A stretch of 63,870 nt of DNA, counting the filler, from Octopus bimaculoides (lineage: Eukaryota), in the NCBI RefSeq assembly GCF_001194135.2. It is 4 parts of 4 records of this genome, joined end to end, with 100 filler letters (N's around TTAATTAATTAA, not from the genome) between each part and the next. Parts side by side here need not be neighbours in the genome. Positions count along the whole stretch, not along the records: positions 1 to 29,274 come from NC_068996.1; 3 more parts are not named here. One strand, 5' to 3'. A program made the translations under genes and the position numbers. This document shows, piece by piece, positions 1,282 to 27,300 of the stretch (its first letter is position 1; each line of letters starts with the position of its first letter). The notes under the pieces are model-generated. The model was not told the DNA's origin, did not search any database, and worked only from the letters and a program-made list of their open reading frames with translations.

Positions 1282-1803
1282 GGCCTGGTTGTAGGGTAAG
1301 AAGCTTGCTCCCCAATCACATGGTTCCGGGTTCAGTCCCACTGCATAACACTTTAAGCAATTGCATTCTACTATAGCCTCAAGCCGACCAAATCCTTGTG
1401 AGTGAACTTGGTAGATAGAAACTGAAAGAAGCTCGTCGTGTATAATTATGTATACATCTATTTATATATCTGTGTGTATGTTTGTGTTTTGTGTCTTTGT
1501 GTTTGTATATGTCTCCTTTTTACAGCTTCACTGTAGGTGTTGGTGGGTTCACGTCCCTGTAAACTAGCGGTTAGGCAAAAGTGACCGATTGAATAAGCAC
1601 TAGACTTAAGAAACAAGTCCTGTGGTGGATTTGTTTGACTAAAAAAATCCATTTACGGCAGTGCTCCAGCATGATCGCAGTCAAATGACTGACACAAGTA
1701 AAAAGAATAATAAAAAAGAATATATGTGATATATATAACATATATATGATACGTGGTGCTCCAGCGTGACCGTAGCCGCATGGCTGAAACGAGTAAAAGA
1801 ATA
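1282..1803 (+). mobile_element. tRNA-derived SINE family A, full length, with a duplicated 3' tail (1755-1803)
   Basis: Head with B-box ggttcagtccca, body ..ggtagatagaaactgaaagaagc.., tail gtgctccagcatg..aagtaaaaagaata; same sequence recurs many times in the window. Confidence 0.85.
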
Positions 1804-4176: not shown

Positions 4177-4252
<76 letters not shown>

Positions 4253-5069
4253 ACACACGCGCACGCGCACGCACACACACACACACGCACACACACACGC
4301 ACACACACACATACACACACGCGTACACACACACAGAGGCACACAGACACACACGCACACGCACGCATACACACACACATACACACAAACGCACACACAC
4401 ACACGCACAGACACATACACACACGCGTACACACACACACACACACACATACACGCACATGTATTTCTTTTCTGTCTTTATTTGAAATCTTCTGAGGAAG
4501 GCGCTGGTTTCTGACAAAGAAACAAAGCTCTATTTTTGGAATGCAGATAAAAACAAATCCATATTTTGAACTTGAGAAAAGTCTTGCATATTTTTACTGT
4601 TCCACTAACAGATTGCATTTGTAATGTGCGCATTAGCTGATGGATTTCTTTTTCTGAAAACGATGGTTTATTCAAACTGTCATTTAGGCATTTATTCACA
4701 AAACCAAGTGTACCAATTATTATTGGTATAAATGCGAATTTATAATCCGGTTATAGAAGCAAAAGGTTTCAAAGAAGTTGTCCTTAGTTGTCCCCTTTCT
4801 CTTTGACTTTTGAAGGGATATTCACATCGACAGGGAAGCTGGCCTCTATGATGTAATTTTTCTTGTCTTTCTCAAACAATGATATCCGGACTGCTATATT
4901 TACACTTAACAGAAGTTTTGATAGGAATTCTCGAGCAGTGTTCTTTGTGTTCATGTTTATGTATGTAATAAATAACAGAACTCCTCTCTATATTTTTTCT
5001 ATGAGTCTCTTTTCCGAATGGCACCGTATATTGTTTTTGCAATAACTTCATGTTGCATAGGGAGGTAGT

Positions 5070-5467
5070 ACATTTCCTATTATTATTATATTTTACTCAT
5101 TTCAGTAATTTGATTGTGGCGATGCTGGAGCATCGTCTTTAGTCGAACAATTCGAACCCAAAACTTATTCTTTGTAAGCTTAGTACTTATTCTATCAGTC
5201 ACTTTTACCGAAGCGCTAAGTTACATAGGACGTAAATATACCAACATCGGTTGTCAAGCGATGGTGGGGTGACAAACACAGACACAAACATATACGTATA
5301 TGTACGACGGGCTTCTTTCAGTTTCCGTCTACCAAATCCACTCACAAGGCTTTGGTCGGCCCGAAGCTATAGTAGAAGACACCTGTCCAAAGTGCTATGT
5401 AGTAGGACTGAACCGGAATCATGTAGTTGGTAAGCAAGATTCTTACCACACAGCCACTCTTGCGCCT
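5070..5467 (-). mobile_element. SINE family A, full length, inserted in the R4 element
   Basis: 5' end AGGCGCAAGAGTGGCTGTGTGG at 5467; conserved body and tail. Confidence 0.9.
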
Positions 5468-6870
5468 TGATGACATTTTTGGCTAGCTGCTATTCCCATC
5501 AGCGCCTTGATGACATTTTTGGCTAGCTGCTAATCCCATCTGCGCCTTCATGATATTTTTGGCTATTTGCTAATCCAATCTGCGCCTTGACATTTTTGGC
5601 TAGCTGCTAATCCAATCTGCGCCTTGATGACATTTTTAGCATGCTGCTAATCCAATCTGCGCCTTGATGACATTTCTGGCATGCTGCTAATCCAATCTGC
5701 GCCTTGATGACATTTTTGGATAGCTGCTAATCCCATCAGCGCCTTGATGACATTTTTGGATAGCTGCTAACCACCTCTGCACCTTGATGACATTTTTCAC
5801 TAGCTGCTAATCCCATCTGCGCCTTGATGACATTTTTGGTTAGCTGCTAATCCCATCTGCGCCTTGATGCCACTTTCGGTTAGCTGCTAATCCCATCTGC
5901 GCCTTCATGATATTTTTGGCTAGTTGCTAATCCAATCTGCGCCTTGACATTTTTGGCTAGCTGCTAACCACCTCTGCGCCTTGATGACATTTTTGGTTAG
6001 CTGCTAATCTCATCTGCGCCTTGATGACATTTTTGGTTAGCTGCTAATCNNNNNNNNNNNNNNNNNNNNNNNNNNNNNNNNNNNNNNNNNNNNNNNNNNN
6101 NNNNNNNNNNNNNNNNNNNNNNNNNNNNNNNNNNNNNNCTGGCATGCTGCTAATCCAATCTGCGCCTTGATGACATTTTTGGATAGCTGCTAATCCCATC
6201 AGCGCCTTGATGACATTTTTGGATAGCTGCTAACCACCTCTGCACCTTGATGACATTTTTCACTAGCTGCTAATCCCATCTGCGCCTTGATGACATTTTT
6301 GGTTAGCTGCTAATCCCATCTGCGCCTTGATGCCACTTTCGGTTAGCTGCTAATCCCATCTGCGCCTTCATGATATTTTTGGCTAGTTGCTAATCCAATC
6401 TGCGCCTTGACATTTTTGGCTAGCTGCTAACCACCTCTGCGCCTTGATGACATTTTTGGTTAGCTGCTAATCTCATCTGCGCCTTGATGACATTTTTGGT
6501 TAGCTGCTAATCCCATCTGTGCCTTGATGACATTTTTGGCTAGCTGCTAATCCCATCTGCGCCTTCATGACATTTTTGGCATGCTGCTAATCCAATCTGC
6601 GCCTTGATGATATTTTTGGATAGCTGCTAATCCCATCAGCGCCTTGATGACATTTTTGGATAGCTGCTAACCACCTCTGCACCTTGATGACATTTTTGAC
6701 TAGCTGCTAATCCCATCTGCGCCTTGATGACATTTTTGGTTAGCTGCTAATCCCATCTGCGCCTTGATGACACTTTCGGTTAGCTGCTAATCCCATCTGC
6801 GCCTTCATGATATTTTTGGCTAGTTGCTAATCCAATCTGCGCCTTGACATTTTTGGCTAGCTGCTAATAC
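5461..6870. repeat. 40-bp minisatellite array with 37-bp variants and a higher-order repeat
   Basis: Consensus tgcgccttgatgacatttttggctagctgctaatcccatc; more than 30 monomers visible; N gap at 6050-6138. Confidence 0.98.
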
Positions 6871-8366
6871 CAGCTATGATGCCTTCCACAAAAAATATCA
6901 TCTATATTTTCGGTTGCATCTTGGAGTTGCAAGGGCTTCACTGTCTCTTTTGTTTACTAAATTTTCCGTAGCAATCTCCTGTTCTTGGATAGATAATGCA
7001 TAGCCTTCGAAGTGGTGTTATGTGATGTAGTGATTACGAATTCAAGACCGACTCCGCTTCATGTAAATATACTGTCTTCTTCAAGTCTTCGGGAAACATA
7101 TTAATGAATTTTTTGTCATGCTGACCGGTTCACATATCCAGGTCTTCTTTGAGGTGTGTTAATACTGCTGTTTTGAAGTTGAATGGGAGGCCGTCATGGA
7201 GAGACTGTTTCCTGAGGAGATCACAGCGGATACACAGAATTTTGTTCCCTTCCCTTTACAACACTACGCTTATGTATATATTTTTGTTGCTGTTGTTTAG
7301 CAAGTACTGCCTGAGACTATACATGTATGTATGTATGTATGTATGTATGTATGTATGTATGTATGTATGTATGTATGGATGGATGGATGGATGGATGGTT
7401 GGATGGATGGAATATTTCGACATCTCGCGTGTCTTCAACTGGTTCAAAAAATAAATTTGTCAATCTACTTCATTTTGGTTAATATAGAATGGATTGAGGT
7501 AACTCCTCCTGAAGATATAGAGTTGAAGACACGCGAGATGTCGAAATATTGTTCACAAGATAACAAATGGCACTCTTCTTTTAATTTGGAGCTCTGTAAG
7601 ATTCCAGTTAATGATGTTAAAACTATATTGGTCTACTGAAAGTGCCAGGGTGTTAATGGCTTCGTTACGTTTTTAGAGTTGAGTTCAAGTTTTAGTATGA
7701 GAAGACACTTTAGTATGAGTCTTATTCTCCTGTAATAATCCTTTCTTATCTTTTCCTTCATTGTAGCATGTTGTATACCATCTCCTTCGTTTATCCCCAG
7801 GTATTTGTAATTTTCTTGTGGGTCAAGCTCCTTGATGGTAGTGTCGGTAACCAATTTAATGGAAGCTGTTTGCCTGAGCTTGCCTCTTACAAAAGTTGCT
7901 TTAGCACACTTATCAAGTCTAAAGCCCATCCCGATGTCATTACTGAATTCTTTAACAGTTGTTAGCAGCCCTGCTAGCTCTTCGTCATTTCCAGCAAACA
8001 GTTTCAGATCGTCTATATAAAACAGATGGCTTATTGTCGTATGTTATTTAGTTCGTTTGTGAGTGAGATCAGTGTCATGCAGAAGAGCAATGGGAAGAAG
8101 GAGTCACCTTAAAAGGTGTCTCGTTTGATTCTGATGTTAGTTTGGCTCATCCCATTACTATGGTTTAGAAGGAGATGTGTGTTTTACTTGGCCATACTTT
8201 CTTGTAAGAATCTGAAGATGACAAGAGAGATCTTATATATCTCAAGGACCTTGAGTATCCAATTATGTGGGACACTATCAAATGCTTTCCTTTAGTTTAT
8301 CCATGCCATACTCAGGTTCTTCTTTTTGCTCCGGCAATTCTCTACAATCGTTTTATTTATGAGTAA

Positions 8367-8367
<1 letters not shown>

Positions 8368-8456
<89 letters not shown>

Positions 8457-8470
8457 GTTATTATTATTGA
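8368..8470. repeat. (TTA)n microsatellite at the 5' junction of the R4 element; representative of many microsatellites (CA, TA, ATCT, GAT, TAG, GA) across the window
   Basis: Read directly. Confidence 0.97.
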
Positions 8471-9478: not shown

Positions 9479-10504
9479 TTTACACCATCTGATTTTGGTA
9501 ATTCTGATTTTGTTGATCTTGTTGATTTTAGCTTATTTTGGTGTATTACACCATTTGTCTACAGCAAGACGTTTTCTCCATAACAAAACACAGTGAATAG
9601 TTTCTCATCCCCCCTCCCTCATTCCCTCACTATACTCATCCTCTCTATCCAGTCAGATCAACTGACCATAAAAATATACCACTACCATTCTACACCTCAA
9701 TCTTTCCTCTATCCCCTTCCCACTCTGTCTTCAAGACTTGACCTACTTACCCTAGGCACTCTTCTCACTTGACCTGGGATTCCTTCAAGTGAACACAAGC
9801 AAAATACCTCGGACACAATATGGCATATATTCACCTCAGCTATCTCAGCCTTTGCTGCAGCAACTATTTCTGGATTATACCCACAAGGATTACTTTACAC
9901 GGATACTNNNNNNNNNNNNNNNNNNNNNNNNNNNNNNNNNNNNNNNNNNNNNNNNNNNNNNNNNNNNNNNNNNNNNNNNNNNNNNNNNNNNNNNNNNNNN
10001 NNNNNNNNNNNNNNNNNNNNNNNNNNNNNNNNNNNNNNNNNNNNNNNNNNNNNNNNNNNNNNNNNNNNNNNNNNNNNNNNNNNNNNNNNNNNNNNNNNNN
10101 NNNNNNNNNNNNNNNNNNNNNNNNNNNNNNNNNNNNNNNNNNNNNNNNNNNNNNNNNNNNNNNNNNNNNNNNNNNNNNNNNNNNNNNNNNNNNNNNNNNN
10201 NNNNNNNNNNNNNNNNNNNNNNNNNNNNNNNNNNNNNNNNNNNNNNNNNNNNNNNNNNNNNNNNNNNNNNNNNNNNNNNNNNNNNNNNNNNNNNNNNNNN
10301 NNNNNNNNNNNNNNNNNNNNNNNNNNNNNNNNNNNNNNNNNNNNNNNNNNNNNNNNNNNNNNNNNNNNNNNNNNNNNNNNNNNNNNNNNNNNNNNNNNNN
10401 NNNNNNNNNNNNNNNNNNNNNNNNNNNNNNNNNNNNNNNNNNNNNNNNNNNNNNNNNNNNNNNNNNNNNNNNNNNNNNNNNNNNNNNNNNNNNNNNNNNN
10501 NNNA

Positions 10505-12770: not shown

Positions 12771-15700
12771 AAAGATGGGTGAATGTAGCAANNNNNNNNN
12801 NNNNNNNNNNNNNNNNNNNNNNNNNNNNNNNNNNNNNNNNNNNNNNNNNNNNNNNNNNNNNNNNNNNNNNNNNNNNNNNNNNNNNNNNNNNNNNNNNNNN
12901 NNNNNNNNNNNNNNNNNNNNNNNNNNNNNNNNNNNNNNNNNNNNNNNNNNNNNNNNNNNNNNNNNNNNNNNNNNNNNNNNNNNNNNNNNNNNNNNNNNNN
13001 NNNNNNNNNNNNNNNNNNNNNNNNNNNNNNNNNNNNNNNNNNNNNNNNNNNNNNNNNNNNNNNNNNNNNNNNNNNNNNNNNNNNNNNNNNNNNNNNNNNN
13101 NNNNNNNNNNNNNNNNNNNNNNNNTTTTTTTTTTTTTTTTTTTTCCTTCCTTCCCCCTCCCAAAAAGAAAAGCTCTACATTGTATTTGTCCCATCTTCGT
13201 TGAGCCCTGTGTGGCTAATAAAAGAAATGTATCTAATATGATATAACTATATATAATTATGCATCTGTGTATACGAGTATGTGCGTTTGTAAATTCATAT
13301 ATTTCTAATTTTATATAAGTAACTGACAAAAAAGCCCCCGAAACAAAAACAAAAAATACAAAACAAATACAACAGAAACAAAACCCTCCACAAATTCTCA
13401 AAAGCGATAATTAGTGTAAATACTTCTCTCACTCTGCTTCTCTCCCCTTTCCACACGACTTCTTTATATTGTTCTCTCTTTTTTTCTGTCTACTCAGTTT
13501 TGCTTAGAGTGCTTTGTAGAAGGTACTACTGCAATAGTATCATTATAAGTTGTAGTAATAGTAGTAGTTGTTACTGTTGTTGCAATTACTGTTGTTGTTG
13601 ACGATGTTCGCTGCGTGAACTTGCTTCAGTTGTCATTGTGTTGTTAGTGAGACTAGGTCATTTAACGCACACAGGTGGACTAAACCAGCTTCTTACAGTT
13701 AGCAACATATATTATCGATTGATTATGGGTAGCATCAAAGCGATGTAAAGTATTCTAATTGATCATGAGATTCACCAGGTTCCCTTAAATTCATAGTTTT
13801 GACATTTGGTCTCGACCTTTGACACAGCCCAGAAACGAAGGCCAATACTTAATCAGGATGAATGATGCAGGGACCGGTGTATAAGGGAGGCTATTTCTAA
13901 AAGGCTGAGAGCATAATTTAGCAACGATGCAAACAGTTCAGCCGTGAATCGAAATCATGGAATGAACCATTCATACACACGCCCATTTCCCCATCTACAA
14001 CTCACTCCCCCCACCGCAACATTAGAATTAATGGTATTATGGTTTAGCCATTTCTTGTCTTGAATGGTGGCAAGAATGTGGATGTTGCGAAGACTTATGG
14101 GACGAAACTCAGAGTAGACTGTCGACTTTTGATATAAGAAATGCACACGCACACACACACGCGCATGCGCGCGCGCGCACACACACATATACACATGCAT
14201 ATACATGTATGTGTGTGTGCATACATACTTACACACATAGACACACACACGCACACGCACACACACACACACATACACACGTCTAATAGATCACACTCAA
14301 TGATTAGTGACGGACTGAATCATCAACTTCGAATATATTTATGCTTAGATGTGCAAATGAGAAAAAGGTTACTCAATACATGCAGTAGAGTATATTCATT
14401 TATGTAAATTTAATGATTCATATGTGGTGCGATTATTCAGGCTTTATCGAAACGAACGAAAGAAAAAGAAAAGATATCAGAATTTATACTGGAATTTGGC
14501 TCTCTCTTGATGGCAGAGGTCAGGTGCAAAACTTAGTGCGCTTACATATTTGTAGGGATTAAGGTTAGAAAAATATTAATTATTTTCCCTTGATAAAATA
14601 TGAAATGTCCTTCATGACCACTCTAATGGTCAAAAAAATGAAAATCGAGTAAGATGTCAGGTGCCAGCCGTTGGACTAATAAATAATACCACAGCAAGGT
14701 GAACGATATATATATATATATATATATANNNNNNNNNNNNNNNNNNNNNNNNNNNNNNNNNNNNNNNNNNNNNNNNNNNNNNNNNNNNNNNNNNNNNNNN
14801 NNNNNNNNNNNNNNNNNNNNNNNNNNNNNNNNNNNNNNNNNNNNNNNNNNNNNNNNNNNNNNNNNNNNNNNNNNNNNNNNNNNNNNNNNNNNNNNATATA
14901 TATATATATATATAAATGGTTTCTAGCGAGATTAGGGATCATTTTATCAAAACAAAAGCAAAGAAATTTTTTTATAAACAACCCGTGTCTGTTAACAACC
15001 AAATATCTAGACAAACACAACTCAGATGAGATACTCTCTTCTATAATATTATTCTGCTTGTTCCTGCGCTTTATATGTTTTGTCCGTGTGTTACGCCAAA
15101 GGAGGTAATAATTCGAACAGAGAAAGAAATATCCTTTCTGTTATAGACTTAAAGCCTGAAATTTGGGGGAAGAGAGCATGTCGATGTAATCGACGCCAGA
15201 GCTCATCTAATACTTATTTCATCAACCTCGAAAGGATGAAAGGTGAAATCGACTTCGAAGATACTTGAACTCAGAGCATAAAGACGGACGAAATGCTGCT
15301 AAACACTTTCCCCCAGCATGAAGAGATAGAGAAAGGTCAATATTATTCTGTATTTATGTGATCAAATCGCAAGCACAATGGAATAATGTGGCCATACTGG
15401 ATCACTGCCATTGTTCATTTTCGAAATTAGGTTTAAATGCTTATCGGTATAATGGCAGTAGACATACATACATCAGCAGAAGGGAAAGTAGACATGATAG
15501 TTAATTACTCAGATAGACAGTCAGATAGAACGCTAACCAGCTAGATAGGTGAATCTTCAGATATATCCATGCAGATAAAGAGATATATTAATGGATATGC
15601 AAATAGATAGATAACTGAATTGAAATTAAATGCTATACTTAAAAGTACAATTTTGATTAAATTATATGATTCATTTTGAATTTCCTTCTTTGTGTTTAAT

Positions 15701-25400: not shown

Positions 25401-26080
25401 GGTTGCGAGTTGATAAAGCATGCTTGGAGAATATCACACGCTGCAATAGTACAATCTGGTAGGATCTCTCTCTCTCTCTCTCCCCCCCCTCTCTCTCCCN
25501 NNNNNNNNNNNNNNNNNNNNNNNNNNNNNNNNNNNNNNNNNNNNNNNNNNNNNNNNNNNNNNNNNNNNNNNNNNNNNNNNNNNNNNNNNNNNNNNNNNNN
25601 NNNNNNNNNNNNNNNNNNNNNNNNNNNNNNNNNNNNNNNNNNNNNNNNNNNNNNNNNNNNNNNNNNNNNNNNNNNNNNNNNNNNNNNNNNNNNNNNNNNN
25701 NNNNNNNNNNNNNNNNNNNNNNNNNNNNNNNNNNNNNNNNNNNNNNNNNNNNNNNNNNNNNNNNNNNNNNNNNNNNNNNNNNNNNNNNNNNNNNNNNNNN
25801 NNNNNNNNNNNNNNNNNNNNNNNNNNNNNNNNNNNNNNNNNNNNNNNNNNNNNNNNNNNNNNNNNNNNNNNNNNNNNNNNNNNNNNNNNNNNNNNNNNNN
25901 NNNNNNNNNNNNNNNNNNNNNNNNNNNNNNNNNNNNNNNNNNNNNNNNNNNNNNNNNNNNNNNNNNNNNNNNNNNNNNNNNNNNNNNNNNNNNNNNNNNN
26001 NNNNNNNNNNNNNNNNNNNNNNNNNNNNNNNNNNNNNNNNNNNNNNNNNNNNNNNNNNNNNNNNNNNNNNNNNNNNNNNN

Positions 26081-26115
<35 letters not shown>

Positions 26116-27094
26116 TTATTTTATTTATGTGTTTCAGCCAAGTGGCTGCGGTCATGCTGATATATATATAGGTGTGTGTGTGGCTGTGTGGTAAGAAGTT
26201 TATTTCCCACCACATGGTTCCGGGTATATATACCTGGGCAAGTGTCTTCTACTACAGGTCGGGCTGACCAAAATCTTGTGAGTAGATTTGGTAGAAGCCA
26301 AAAGAAACTTGTAGTATATATGTATATATTTATATACACACATTCTTTTACTCTTTCAAGTGTTTCAGCTTTAAAGCTGCAGTCATAATGAGGCGCGCGC
26401 GCGTGTGACGTTGACTTTTGTATTTCTAAATGTTAATATAGACAAGCATGATAGTTGGCATAACACTCTTTTGTTTTCCATATGTAGATAGATAAATCAG
26501 TGTAATTCTCTTTTCACTACCACATATAACTAGATAAAGTTGTGCCATTCCCTTTATGTATTTGCCAATTGATTTATAATTTAATTGCATTTCAAATACA
26601 TAAGATAGAGGATGGACACAGCTGTATCCAGTTACATATTGCAATTAAAAGAGAAGTACGCCTACTTTAAGTTATCATAGTCGATGTTAGCATTTAGTGA
26701 TAATTGTGTCAGACGTTTTAAAACATCAGGTATTTTAAATAATAAAAATAATACAAAAAGAAAGAATTTGATAATGCCGATATGAAAATATATTATACCT
26801 TGCCAACATCAATAGAGATTGACACTCAGGATGAAAATCGCCATCATGCCGTAAGTTACAACTTCCTCTGTATGTAATCAGTCGAATATTCCAAACACGC
26901 TGGCCAAACAATGCTTATCAACCAATGAAATAATTGTTTTTGCCAGCCAGTTCCGTCTGAAGATTGAGTTCGAGCCTGAAACGTAAAGTAAAGGAATATA
27001 AAACAATTGGGATTGAGACAGTTAACATACATGTACAGACGTACAGATAACCGTACATGCATACCAACTTCCGTACATATATGTACGTACATAC

Positions 27095-27300
27095 ATCCCT
27101 CTCTCTGAACCCCCCTCTCTCTGAACCCCCCTCTCTCTGNNNNNNNNNNNNNNNNNNNNNNNNNNNNNNNNNNNNNNNNNNNNNNNNNNNNNNNNNNNNN
27201 NNNNNNNNNNNNNNNNNNNNNNNNNNNTCTCTGAACCCCCCTCTCTCTGAACCCCCCTCTCTCTGAACTCCCCCTCTCTCTGAACCCCCCCTCTCTCTCT
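27095..27300. repeat. About 16-bp minisatellite (ctctctgaaccccc) spanning a gap
   Basis: At least 5 visible units. Confidence 0.9.

What the first reader, a model, noticed from the sequence alone, without database searches (positions are those of the whole stretch)
5040..6900. Minisatellite monomer is a chimera of R4 coding sequence and a SINE 5' end
Seen: on the minus strand the monomer reads gatggg-ATT AGC AGC TAG CCA AAA ATG TCA TCA AGG-CGCA. The capitalised codons give ISS*PKMSSR, and the R4 frame resumes as YYLPMQH on the far side of the SINE (about 5060). I recall ISSCPKMSSRYYLPMRH as the CCHC knuckle stretch of this clade. The last 7 nt, AGGCGCA, are the first 7 nt of the SINE, with AGG shared. 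So about 1.4 kb of array consists of repeated copies of the insertion junction itself. Inference: the array was seeded at the 5' junction of SINE integration (repeated template jumps or microhomology slippage) and then expanded, which is a visible satellite birth event.
Basis: partly seen in the sequence, partly recalled or inferred. Interest (0 to 1): 0.7.

Follow-up and report, generated by a model that had tools for sequence, protein, structure and literature searches.

The report
Minisatellite grown from a SINE-in-LINE junction
A 40-bp tandem repeat of about 1 to 1.4 kb sits where a SINE inserted into a dead LINE retrotransposon, and each repeat unit is made of the LINE's zinc-knuckle codons plus the first few bases of the SINE; this is a tidy but ordinary case of a minisatellite born from transposon sequence, and its copy number is unreliable because of an assembly gap.

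Summary
On the minus strand, 6874-5461 is a 40-nt array reading GATGGG-ATTAGCAGCTAGCCAAAAATGTCATCAAGG-CGCA. It lies between the upstream part of a decayed LINE that carries a restriction-like endonuclease (RLE) and a tRNA-type SINE (5466-5071). The LINE frame resumes as YYLPMQH at 5070-5050.

In 50 of 51 relatives carrying the knuckle, the spacing from the last Cys to RH is fixed. Twelve read ISSC.KMSSRYYLP exactly. So the SINE sits exactly between the Arg and Tyr codons, and the monomer carries the codons just upstream.

The SINE's contribution to the monomer is only CGCA, with GG shared. This is the most economical reading but is not proven.

Gap test: the 374 nt before the gap (5676-6049) are identical to the 374 nt after it (6139-6512). 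The 89 N are also out of 40-nt phase. The contig ends therefore probably overlap, and the true array may be about 951 bp (24 monomers).

A higher-order repeat survives that correction, which points to growth by unequal exchange.

Three things remain untested: seeding during integration, placement in the R4 clade, and whether the monomer is unique to this locus. No genome of the source organism was available to search.

This is an ordinary kind of feature (a transposon-derived minisatellite) and of modest interest.

The parts
7504..8348 (-). Decayed reverse-transcriptase fragment of a non-LTR retrotransposon. It is closest to the 'type A' proteins (P0001, P0016 and similar).
   Evidence: Pfam RVT_1, E=3e-13. 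tblastn identity to P0001, P0016 and P0056 is 52-68%.
6875..7348 (-). LINE region between the RT and the zinc knuckle, of 'type B' (P0121-like). It contains ...YALSIQEQEIATENLVNKR... and the start of the knuckle, ...FVEGIIAG. It has stop codons and frameshifts.
   Evidence: tblastn with P0141, P0130, P0142, P0151 and P0124; six-frame translation.
5461..6874 (-). 40-nt minisatellite. The unit is GATGGG + ATTAGCAGCTAGCCAAAAATGTCATCAAGG (ISS*PKMSSR) + CGCA, organised in a higher-order repeat of 11 units (437 nt). The first unit keeps the LINE flank's GCTGGT. The last unit's CGCA (5464-5461) is the resident SINE's own 5' end.
6050..6138 (.). Assembly gap of 89 N inside the array. It is out of 40-nt phase; a fill of 63 nt, or 63 plus multiples of 437, would restore both the monomer and the higher-order register.
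5676..6049 (.). The 374 nt before the gap, 100% identical to 6139-6512 after it. These are probably overlapping contig ends, so this stretch may be counted twice.
   Evidence: other gaps in the piece also lie in repeats.
6139..6512 (.). The 374 nt after the gap, identical to 5676-6049.
5071..5466 (-). tRNA-type SINE in the same orientation as the LINE. Its 5' end is GGCGCAAGAG, followed by an A-box-like TGGCTGTGTGG and a B-box-like GGTTCAGTCC. The (AAT)n tail ends at 5078. GGAAATG (5077-5071) is of uncertain origin. The GG at 5466-5465 is shared with the LINE's AGG codon.
   Evidence: Sequence; other copies at 1286-1713 and 26180-26331.
4562..5070 (-). The LINE continues: YYLPMQHEVIAKTIY (second half of the knuckle region), then the restriction-like endonuclease core (SSPDIIV ... 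IIEASFPVDVN ... KVKEK, about 4889-4787), then ...IPIIIGTLG... to the end of the family ORF.
   Evidence: tblastn with P0121, P0129 and P0141 up to their last residues; alignments; the R2 CCHC/RLE region matches the family profile.
4181..4561 (-). Presumed LINE 3' UTR (about 100 nt), followed by (AC)139, which reads (GT)n on the element's strand. This may be the element's microsatellite tail.
   Evidence: The relative L001 has (CATA)n about 90 nt after its stop codon. This part is inference.

Best explanation
This is a minisatellite that formed in place from a nested transposon insertion.

Proposed order of events:
1. A non-LTR retrotransposon carrying a C-terminal CCHC knuckle and a restriction-like endonuclease inserted on the minus strand and decayed. 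The knuckle Cys codon was already TAG.
2. A tRNA-type SINE then inserted in the same orientation, exactly between the AGG (Arg) and TAC (Tyr) codons of the conserved ...CPKMSSR|YYLP.RH... stretch.
3. A segment of about 40 bp straddling the SINE 5' junction was duplicated in tandem. It held roughly 36 nt of LINE (GCTGGT ATT AGC AGC TAG CCA AAA ATG TCA TCA AGG) and at least the SINE's CGCA.
4. The array then grew and was partly homogenised by unequal exchange or gene conversion in multi-unit blocks.

Shown: steps 1 and 2, the position and composition of the array, and the block-wise growth. Inferred: that the unit includes SINE bases, and therefore that the array is younger than the SINE. How the first duplication arose is unknown. 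The array has no evident function.
For: - Array position and seamless edges: the LINE flank runs in frame into unit 1, and the last unit runs into the SINE.
- The family motif is contiguous and of fixed length in 50 of 51 relatives, so ISS*PKMSSR (array) and YYLPMQH (beyond the SINE) were once adjacent. The MAFFT alignment to homologues agrees.
- All units share the TAG-type codon in place of Cys, so the LINE copy was already damaged before amplification.
- The linker expected for a junction-spanning unit, CGCA+GCTGGT, matches the consensus CGCAGATGGG at 8 of 10 positions with no indel. An element-only unit needs CATCATAGCTGGT, which means a 3-nt deletion and four substitutions (sequence).
- GGCGCA is plausibly the true SINE 5' end. 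It puts the A box at SINE position 11, within my remembered range of about 8-14 for tRNA-derived SINEs. Copy 26180 has GGTGTG..GTGG with the same spacing after its (TA)n flank, and copy 1286 keeps ..CA.G..
- Higher-order repeat: equivalent units in the two non-redundant blocks differ at 0-2 positions, against a mean of 5.0 between neighbours. H1 and H3 match at 290 of 299 positions.
- Some units show CpG decay variants (GGTGCA, GGCACA), so the array is not brand new.
Against: - The SINE contribution is only 4 nt. The six linker bases GATGGG fit the LINE flank at only 4 of 6.
- The LINE flank contains GAAGGC 43 nt upstream of the junction's AAGGC. This allows an element-only origin by slippage between those direct repeats.
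- No SINE family consensus was available; the 5' end rests on two diverged copies.
- No target-site duplication was seen for the SINE.
- No direct repeat longer than 1 nt lies at 40-nt spacing to explain the first duplication.
- Copy number and continuity across the gap are not secure.
- Whether the monomer occurs elsewhere in the genome is unknown.
Confidence: 0.7

Rival explanations
1. The array came first. A unit of about 43 nt, taken only from LINE sequence, was duplicated by slippage between the AAGG(C) repeats at GAA GGC and TCA AGG. It later shortened to 40 nt and diverged. The SINE then landed at the array's downstream edge, with its 5' end joined through microhomology (GGCGCA) to a unit.
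For: AAGGC occurs in the LINE flank (6885-6881) 43 nt upstream of the junction's AAGGC. The monomer linker resembles the flank CATAGCTGGT at 6 of 10 positions. 5' joining of retrotransposed copies commonly uses microhomology (established knowledge).
Against: It needs the SINE's first nick to fall exactly at the array/unique boundary with no loss of LINE sequence (AGG|TAC is intact). It also needs a chance match of the full-length SINE's first 6 nt to the monomer, plus a 3-nt deletion and four substitutions fixed across all units.
Confidence: 0.13
2. One reading: the first few copies were made during SINE integration itself. The reverse transcriptase jumped repeatedly between the 5' end of the SINE RNA and the upstream target DNA, and later expansion did the rest.
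For: The unit spans the junction exactly. One linker variant per higher-order repeat (GAGGTGG, at 6677, 6240, 5777, 6437 and 5974) has GTGG in register with SINE positions 10-13. A unit TTAGC...AAGG+CGCAAGAGTGG would be exactly 40 nt. End-to-end template jumping by R2-type reverse transcriptases is established biochemistry.
Against: Nothing in the sequence separates this from a later duplication. The consensus linker fits the LINE flank better than the SINE. The register match covers only 4 nt. Present-day copies are dominated by later block duplication.
Confidence: 0.1
3. The 40-mer is a dispersed repeat or part of a composite mobile element (array plus SINE) present at many loci. It would then not be a local birth.
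For: None positive. It could not be excluded, because the source genome could not be searched.
Against: Both flanks of the array-plus-SINE continue the same LINE reading frame at exactly adjacent codons. The other SINE copies in the window have no such array, and the 40-mer occurs nowhere else in the 29 kb.
Confidence: 0.04
4. The array is largely an assembly artefact.
For: The 374 nt on each side of the gap are identical. The scaffold breaks in repeats at most of its eight gaps.
Against: After removing the redundant 374 nt, 24 units remain inside two contigs. They carry distinct variants and a non-identical higher-order repeat. An assembler does not invent that.
Confidence: 0.03

Closest known systems
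Transposon-derived minisatellites, for example Alu-derived minisatellites (Jurka and Gentles 2006) and the human genome survey by Ahmed and Liang 2012 (PMC3389668)
   Same: A short internal piece of a retroelement is duplicated in place and then expanded locally. The array stays embedded in the parent element. The survey reports that 23% of human mini/satellites derive from transposons, that any region of the element can be used, and that initiation is unexplained for most.
   Different: Here the unit appears to straddle the junction of two nested elements (LINE coding sequence plus the SINE 5' end) rather than lying inside one. No flanking 5-10 bp direct repeat at the unit's spacing was found, so the Haber-Louis initiation model is not evident.
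CRM1TR and CRM4TR, tandem repeats derived from maize centromeric retrotransposons (Sharma et al. 2013, PMC3648361)
   Same: The monomer is assembled from defined parts of a retrotransposon. The arrays are specific to their loci, are homogenised locally by gene conversion, and can be ordered in time relative to nested insertions.
   Different: Those monomers are hundreds of bp of LTR plus UTR from one element and form much larger arrays. This one is 40 bp, about 1 kb in total, and combines two unrelated elements.
R2/R4/Dong-type LINEs carrying a restriction-like endonuclease
   Same: A reverse transcriptase is followed by a CCHC knuckle and a PD-(D/E)xK endonuclease. R2 proteins are the nearest solved structures (E=6e-19 for the RT, 5e-05 for the knuckle/RLE profile). 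Dong-R4 LINEs are reported as abundant in Octopus vulgaris (PMC13282606).
   Different: Placement in the R4 clade was not tested. The copy is mosaic: its RT is most like one protein group (knuckle ETIDH..SGC..LA..EY..RH) and its C-terminus is like another (MSSRYYLP).
Octopus tRNA-derived SINEs OK, OR1 and OR2 (Ohshima and Okada 1994, cited in PMC4758252)
   Same: A-box and B-box-like head, a length of about 390 nt, a simple-repeat tail, and several diverged copies within 29 kb.
   Different: No reference sequence was at hand, so the family was not identified. ARAGORN finds no tRNA fold. The source organism itself was not verified.

Membership tests
RLE-type non-LTR retrotransposon (R2/R4/Dong-like) | Reverse transcriptase domain | tested here: met
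   Pfam RVT_1, E=3e-13, on the translation of 8340-7640. 174 homologues, the best at E=1.9e-47.
RLE-type non-LTR retrotransposon (R2/R4/Dong-like) | CCHC zinc knuckle C-terminal to the RT | tested here: met
   The window reads ..FVEGIIAGISS*PKMSSR|YYLPMQHEVIAKTIY against the family's C..C..VEDIxHVISSCPKMSSRYYLPLRHDVVAKTI. It is present only in decayed form: His is replaced by Ala and the last Cys by a stop. The R2 knuckle aligns to the family profile.
RLE-type non-LTR retrotransposon (R2/R4/Dong-like) | PD-(D/E)xK restriction-like endonuclease after the knuckle | tested here: met
   SSPDIIV ... IIEASFPVDVN ... KVKEK aligns with family columns P138, D139, E154, P158, D160, N162 and K170, which are invariant or nearly invariant.
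R4 clade specifically | Phylogenetic grouping of the RT with R4, Dong and Rex6 | not testable with these tools
   No reference R4, Dong or Rex6 sequences were available, and none of the retrieved relatives carries a clade name. The only support is literature reporting that Dong-R4 is common in octopus.
tRNA-derived SINE | Internal pol III A and B boxes in a tRNA-like head | tested here: inconclusive
   TGGCTGTGTGG and GGTTCAGTCC are readable at the expected spacing. ARAGORN calls no tRNA and Rfam gives no tRNA hit.
tRNA-derived SINE | Dispersed copies with a common 5' end | tested here: met
   Copies at 1286-1713 (E=4e-52) and 26180-26331 (E=6e-18), plus two weak ones. Their 5' ends align to within a few nt of GGCGCA.
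tRNA-derived SINE | Target-site duplication flanking the insertion | tested here: not met
   No duplication is visible. The LINE codons AGG|TAC are exactly adjacent once the SINE and array are removed. Only AAATG in GGAAATG (5077-5071) echoes the upstream AAATGTCATCAAGG.
Transposon-derived minisatellite | Head-to-tail units homologous to the sequence of the element they lie in | tested here: met
   TRF scores 856 to 1391. The unit encodes the element's own knuckle residues and is continuous with the flank.
Transposon-derived minisatellite | Growth by unequal exchange or conversion (higher-order periodicity) | tested here: met
   An 11-unit (437-nt) higher-order repeat. Equivalent units differ at 0-2 positions against 5.0 between neighbours.
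Transposon-derived minisatellite | Short direct repeats flanking the founder unit (Haber-Louis initiation) | tested here: inconclusive
   Only 1 nt is shared at 40-nt spacing. AAGGC repeats at 43 nt and AG..TGG at 41-43 nt (sequence; note).
Satellite DNA family (multi-locus, long arrays) | Many loci or arrays of tens of kb | not testable with these tools
   There is one locus of 0.95-1.4 kb in this window. The 40-mer is absent from the rest of the 29 kb. No source genome was available, and the public collections gave 0 matches.

The most novel reading that the evidence does not exclude
The array is a fossil of reverse-transcriptase template jumping. During SINE integration the enzyme cycled between the 5' end of the SINE RNA and the upstream target DNA. 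It laid down several junction copies at once, and these then became a self-expanding minisatellite. That would be a direct route from retrotransposition to the birth of a tandem repeat, and would bear on the survey's statement that initiation is unexplained for most transposon-derived repeats (PMC3389668).
Probability: 0.1. Interest if true: 0.55.

Novelty: new member of a known kind. Interest (0 to 1): 0.3.

Why it matters
This locus allows the events to be put in order: LINE decay, SINE insertion at a codon-exact site, duplication across the junction, then block-wise expansion. Loci like this are useful for studying how minisatellites start, which is poorly understood. If the array is specific to one lineage, it could serve as a polymorphic marker or a dating point in cephalopod genomes. 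It is also a practical warning: the stated array length depends on a scaffold gap whose two flanks are identical.

Tried and rejected
- Other copies of the LINE in the window: none found.
- Same-family LINE copies through the protein database: the best RT hits are 66% identical in DNA, lack the SINE in 20-kb flanks, and come from another organism. The C-terminal relatives come from unnamed ENA assemblies, a cnidarian, and a contaminated bacterial MAG. No family consensus could be built at nucleotide level.
- Exact-pattern scans for the monomer and for the SINE core: 0 matches in the metagenome, prokaryote-genome and viral collections.
- Literature search for a SINE core string: 0 papers.
- DNA hairpin in the monomer as a driver of slippage: z = -0.72, rejected.
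- Rfam hits (mir-297, mir-1277 and mir-3149 on the microsatellite; SNORD39 in the array): all far below the gathering score, so chance.
- ARAGORN: no tRNA in the window.
- Pfam on the decayed C-terminal translation: no hit.
- The 37-mer form as the ancestral state: the distant type-A alignment hinted at one residue fewer. This was rejected because 50 of 51 true relatives have the longer MSSRYYLP spacing.
Full report
**1. What is in the sequence**

Tandem Repeats Finder reports a 40-nt array at 5461-6049 and at 6146-6872, with 87% matches and scores of 856 and 1076. Splitting the minus strand into units gives 33 whole monomers. Most are 40 nt and a few are 37 nt, lacking TCA. There are also partial monomers on either side of the N run.

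On the minus strand the first unit (6874-6838) begins GCTGGT. It is continuous, in frame, with the upstream flank ...GAA GGC ATC ATA | GCT GGT ATT AGC AGC TAG CCA AAA ATG TCA AGG. The last unit (5500-5461) ends ...TCA TCA AGG CGCA and runs straight into AGAGTGGCTGTGTGGTAAG.

**2. The neighbours**

*The SINE.* From about 5466 to 5071 on the minus strand lies an element of about 390 nt.
- It has an A-box-like TGGCTGTGTGG and a B-box-like GGTTCAGTCC.
- Its (AAT)n tail ends at 5078.
- The window holds two clear further copies, at 1286-1713 (nhmmer E=4e-52) and 26180-26331 (E=6e-18), and two weak ones. It is therefore a dispersed SINE.
- ARAGORN and Rfam do not call a tRNA. 'tRNA-type' rests on the box motifs only.

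*The LINE.* Immediately after the SINE the sequence reads TAC TAC CTC CCT ATG CAA CAT GAA GTT ATT GCA AAA ACA ATA TAC, which is YYLPMQHEVIAKTIY, at 5070-5026. Upstream and downstream of the array and SINE lies a decayed non-LTR retrotransposon on the minus strand.
- The RT at 8348-7504 matches RVT_1 at E=3e-13.
- A C-terminal region at about 7348-4562 has the knuckle, a PD-(D/E)xK endonuclease core (SSPDIIV, IIEASFPVDVN, KVKEK) and the ...IPIIIGTLG... tail.
- The nearest solved structures are R2 proteins: E=6e-19 for the RT of a close homologue, and 5e-05 for the knuckle/RLE profile.

**3. Was the remembered motif real?**

Yes. A search with the decayed C-terminal translation found P0121, which reads ...CRLCKQKTEDINHVISSCPKMSSRYYLPLRHDVVAKTI.... 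A search with P0121 gave 54 more relatives. Of these 55 proteins, 51 contain the knuckle.
- The distance from the last Cys to RH is 11 residues in 50 of the 51.
- R[YF]Y[LI]P is contiguous in 43.
- KMSSRYYLP is exact in 22.
- ISSC.KMSSRYYLP is exact in 12.

So ISS*PKMSSR in the array unit and YYLPMQH beyond the SINE were adjacent in the ancestral element. The SINE lies exactly between the AGG and TAC codons, with no LINE base lost. Every unit has a TAG-type codon where the family has Cys, so the LINE copy was already damaged when amplification began.

**4. Is the unit really a chimera?**

The 30 nt from ATT to AGG are LINE sequence beyond doubt. The six bases before them (consensus GATGGG) match the flank's GCTGGT at 4 of 6. 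The remaining four bases, CGCA, are identical to the bases that follow AGG at the true SINE junction.

Evidence that GGCGCA is the genuine SINE 5' end:
- It places the A box at SINE position 11, within my remembered range of about 8-14 for tRNA-derived SINEs. This rests on my own knowledge, not on a tool result.
- Copy 26180 has GGTGTGTGT before GTGG, with the same spacing, directly after its (TA)n flank.
- Copy 1286 preserves ..CA.G..

A junction-spanning unit predicts the linker CGCA+GCTGGT, which matches the consensus at 8 of 10 positions with no indel.

The main alternative is an element-only unit created by slippage between the AAGGC of GAA GGC (6885-6881) and the AAGG of the Arg codon 43 nt downstream. 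It predicts CATCATAGCTGGT, which needs a 3-nt deletion and four substitutions. It also needs the SINE to have landed later exactly at the array's edge without removing any LINE base, and with its first six bases matching the unit.

I put the junction-spanning reading at about 0.7 plus 0.1 for its integration-time variant, and the array-first reading at about 0.13.

**5. How it grew**

After removing redundancy (see section 6), 24 units remain. Units at equivalent positions of the two blocks, 6874-6438 and 5974-5461, differ at 0-2 positions for units 2 to 8. Neighbouring units differ at 5.0 positions on average. The blocks match at 290 of 299 positions. Units B10-B11 again resemble A1-A2.

This is a higher-order repeat of 11 units (437 nt) and is the signature of unequal exchange or conversion in multi-unit blocks. 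CpG-decay variants of the GGCGCA part (GGTGCA, GGCACA) are present. The monomer has no notable hairpin potential (z = -0.72).

How the first duplication arose cannot be read from the sequence.
- At 40-nt spacing only 1 nt is shared between the two boundaries.
- One linker variant per higher-order repeat (GAGGTGG) has GTGG in register with SINE positions 10-13. A founder unit reaching that far (TTAGC...AAGG+CGCAAGAGTGG) would be exactly 40 nt.
- This is suggestive, but it rests on 4-7 nt (note).

The 374 nt before the gap (5676-6049) are 100% identical to the 374 nt after it (6139-6512). This is the only overlap length with 1% mismatch or less. The 89 N are out of 40-nt phase: 23 mod 40 is needed, and 63 nt would restore both the monomer and the higher-order register.

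The piece has eight N runs. Most lie in simple or tandem repeats, and several have overlapping flanks. The likeliest reading is that two contig ends overlap inside the array and were scaffolded with an estimated gap.
- The secure array length is then 951 bp (24 units).
- The scaffolded length is 1,414 bp.
- A longer array is also possible.

Both sides of the gap are clearly the same array, but continuity and copy number are not established.

**7. What could not be tested**

No genome of the source organism was available. Exact-pattern scans for the monomer and for the SINE core found nothing in the metagenome, prokaryote-genome and viral collections. The relatives retrieved through proteins come from other organisms: their DNA is 66% identical to the window's element and their flanks contain no copy of this SINE.

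Four things therefore remain open: uniqueness to this locus, the nucleotide consensus of the LINE and of the SINE, the state of the orthologous locus, and even the organism. Within the 29 kb the 40-mer occurs nowhere else.

'R4' is confirmed only as far as 'RLE-type LINE related to R2'. Dong-R4 LINEs are reported as abundant in Octopus vulgaris (PMC13282606).

**8. Comparison with what is known**

Minisatellites derived from transposons are common. A human survey found that 23% of mini/satellites derive from transposons, that any part of an element can be used, and that initiation is unexplained for most (PMC3389668). Retrotransposon-derived tandem repeats with locus-specific homogenisation are described in maize (PMC3648361).

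The small twist here is that the unit appears to straddle the junction of two nested elements. That orders the events in time. It does not make the feature a new kind of thing.

**9. Verdict**

The feature is a new member of a known kind, and I score its interest at 0.3.

Noticed in passing
window 5676-6049 and 6139-6512: The 374 nt on each side of the 89-N gap are identical. The contig ends probably overlap, so the scaffold may double-count about 463 bp of the array.
   Followed up: yes
window 8348-7504 versus 7348-4562: The LINE looks mosaic. Its RT is 52-68% identical to proteins whose knuckle reads ETIDH..SGC..LA..EY..RH. Its C-terminus belongs to the MSSRYYLP group, whose own RT (L004) is only 31-48% identical to the window's RT. 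It is either two abutting fragments or a recombinant or unsampled lineage; collinearity and overall length would fit a single element.
   Followed up: partly
window 7411-7440 / 7521-7550 and 7323-7411: A perfect 30-nt inverted repeat with arms 80 nt apart lies next to an (ATGT)n(ATGG)n microsatellite. This is exactly where similarity switches from the RT-type proteins to the C-terminal-type proteins.
   Followed up: partly
window 4181-4459 and 8367-8468: (AC)139 starts about 100 nt after the end of the LINE ORF and may be the element's microsatellite tail. The relative L001 has (CATA)n about 90 nt after its stop codon. (ATT)34 abuts the truncated 5' end of the RT fragment.
   Followed up: no
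window 1286-1713 (+) and 26180-26331 (+): Two further diverged copies of the same SINE are both directly preceded by (TA)n. The copy inside the LINE is not, and it shows no target-site duplication.
   Followed up: partly
L001 (NCBI GCA_038533355.1, contig JBCAYU010000053.1, 1132 nt): P0121 is filed as a hypothetical protein of a Pseudomonadota MAG. It is in fact a LINE knuckle/endonuclease fragment followed by (CATA)n and (TG)n, which points to eukaryotic contamination of that MAG.
   Followed up: partly
window, N runs at 737-1186, 2301-2490, 9908-10503, 12792-13124, 14729-14895, 25500-26080, 27140-27227: There are seven more assembly gaps. Most lie inside microsatellites or short tandem repeats, and several have overlapping flanks. 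Repeat lengths anywhere in this piece are unreliable.
   Followed up: yes
window 5077-5071: GGAAATG, between the SINE's (AAT)n tail and the LINE's TACTAC, is unexplained. It could be the SINE's own 3' end (copy 1286 ends ...GAATATATG) or the remnant of a target-site duplication that began AAATG.
   Followed up: no
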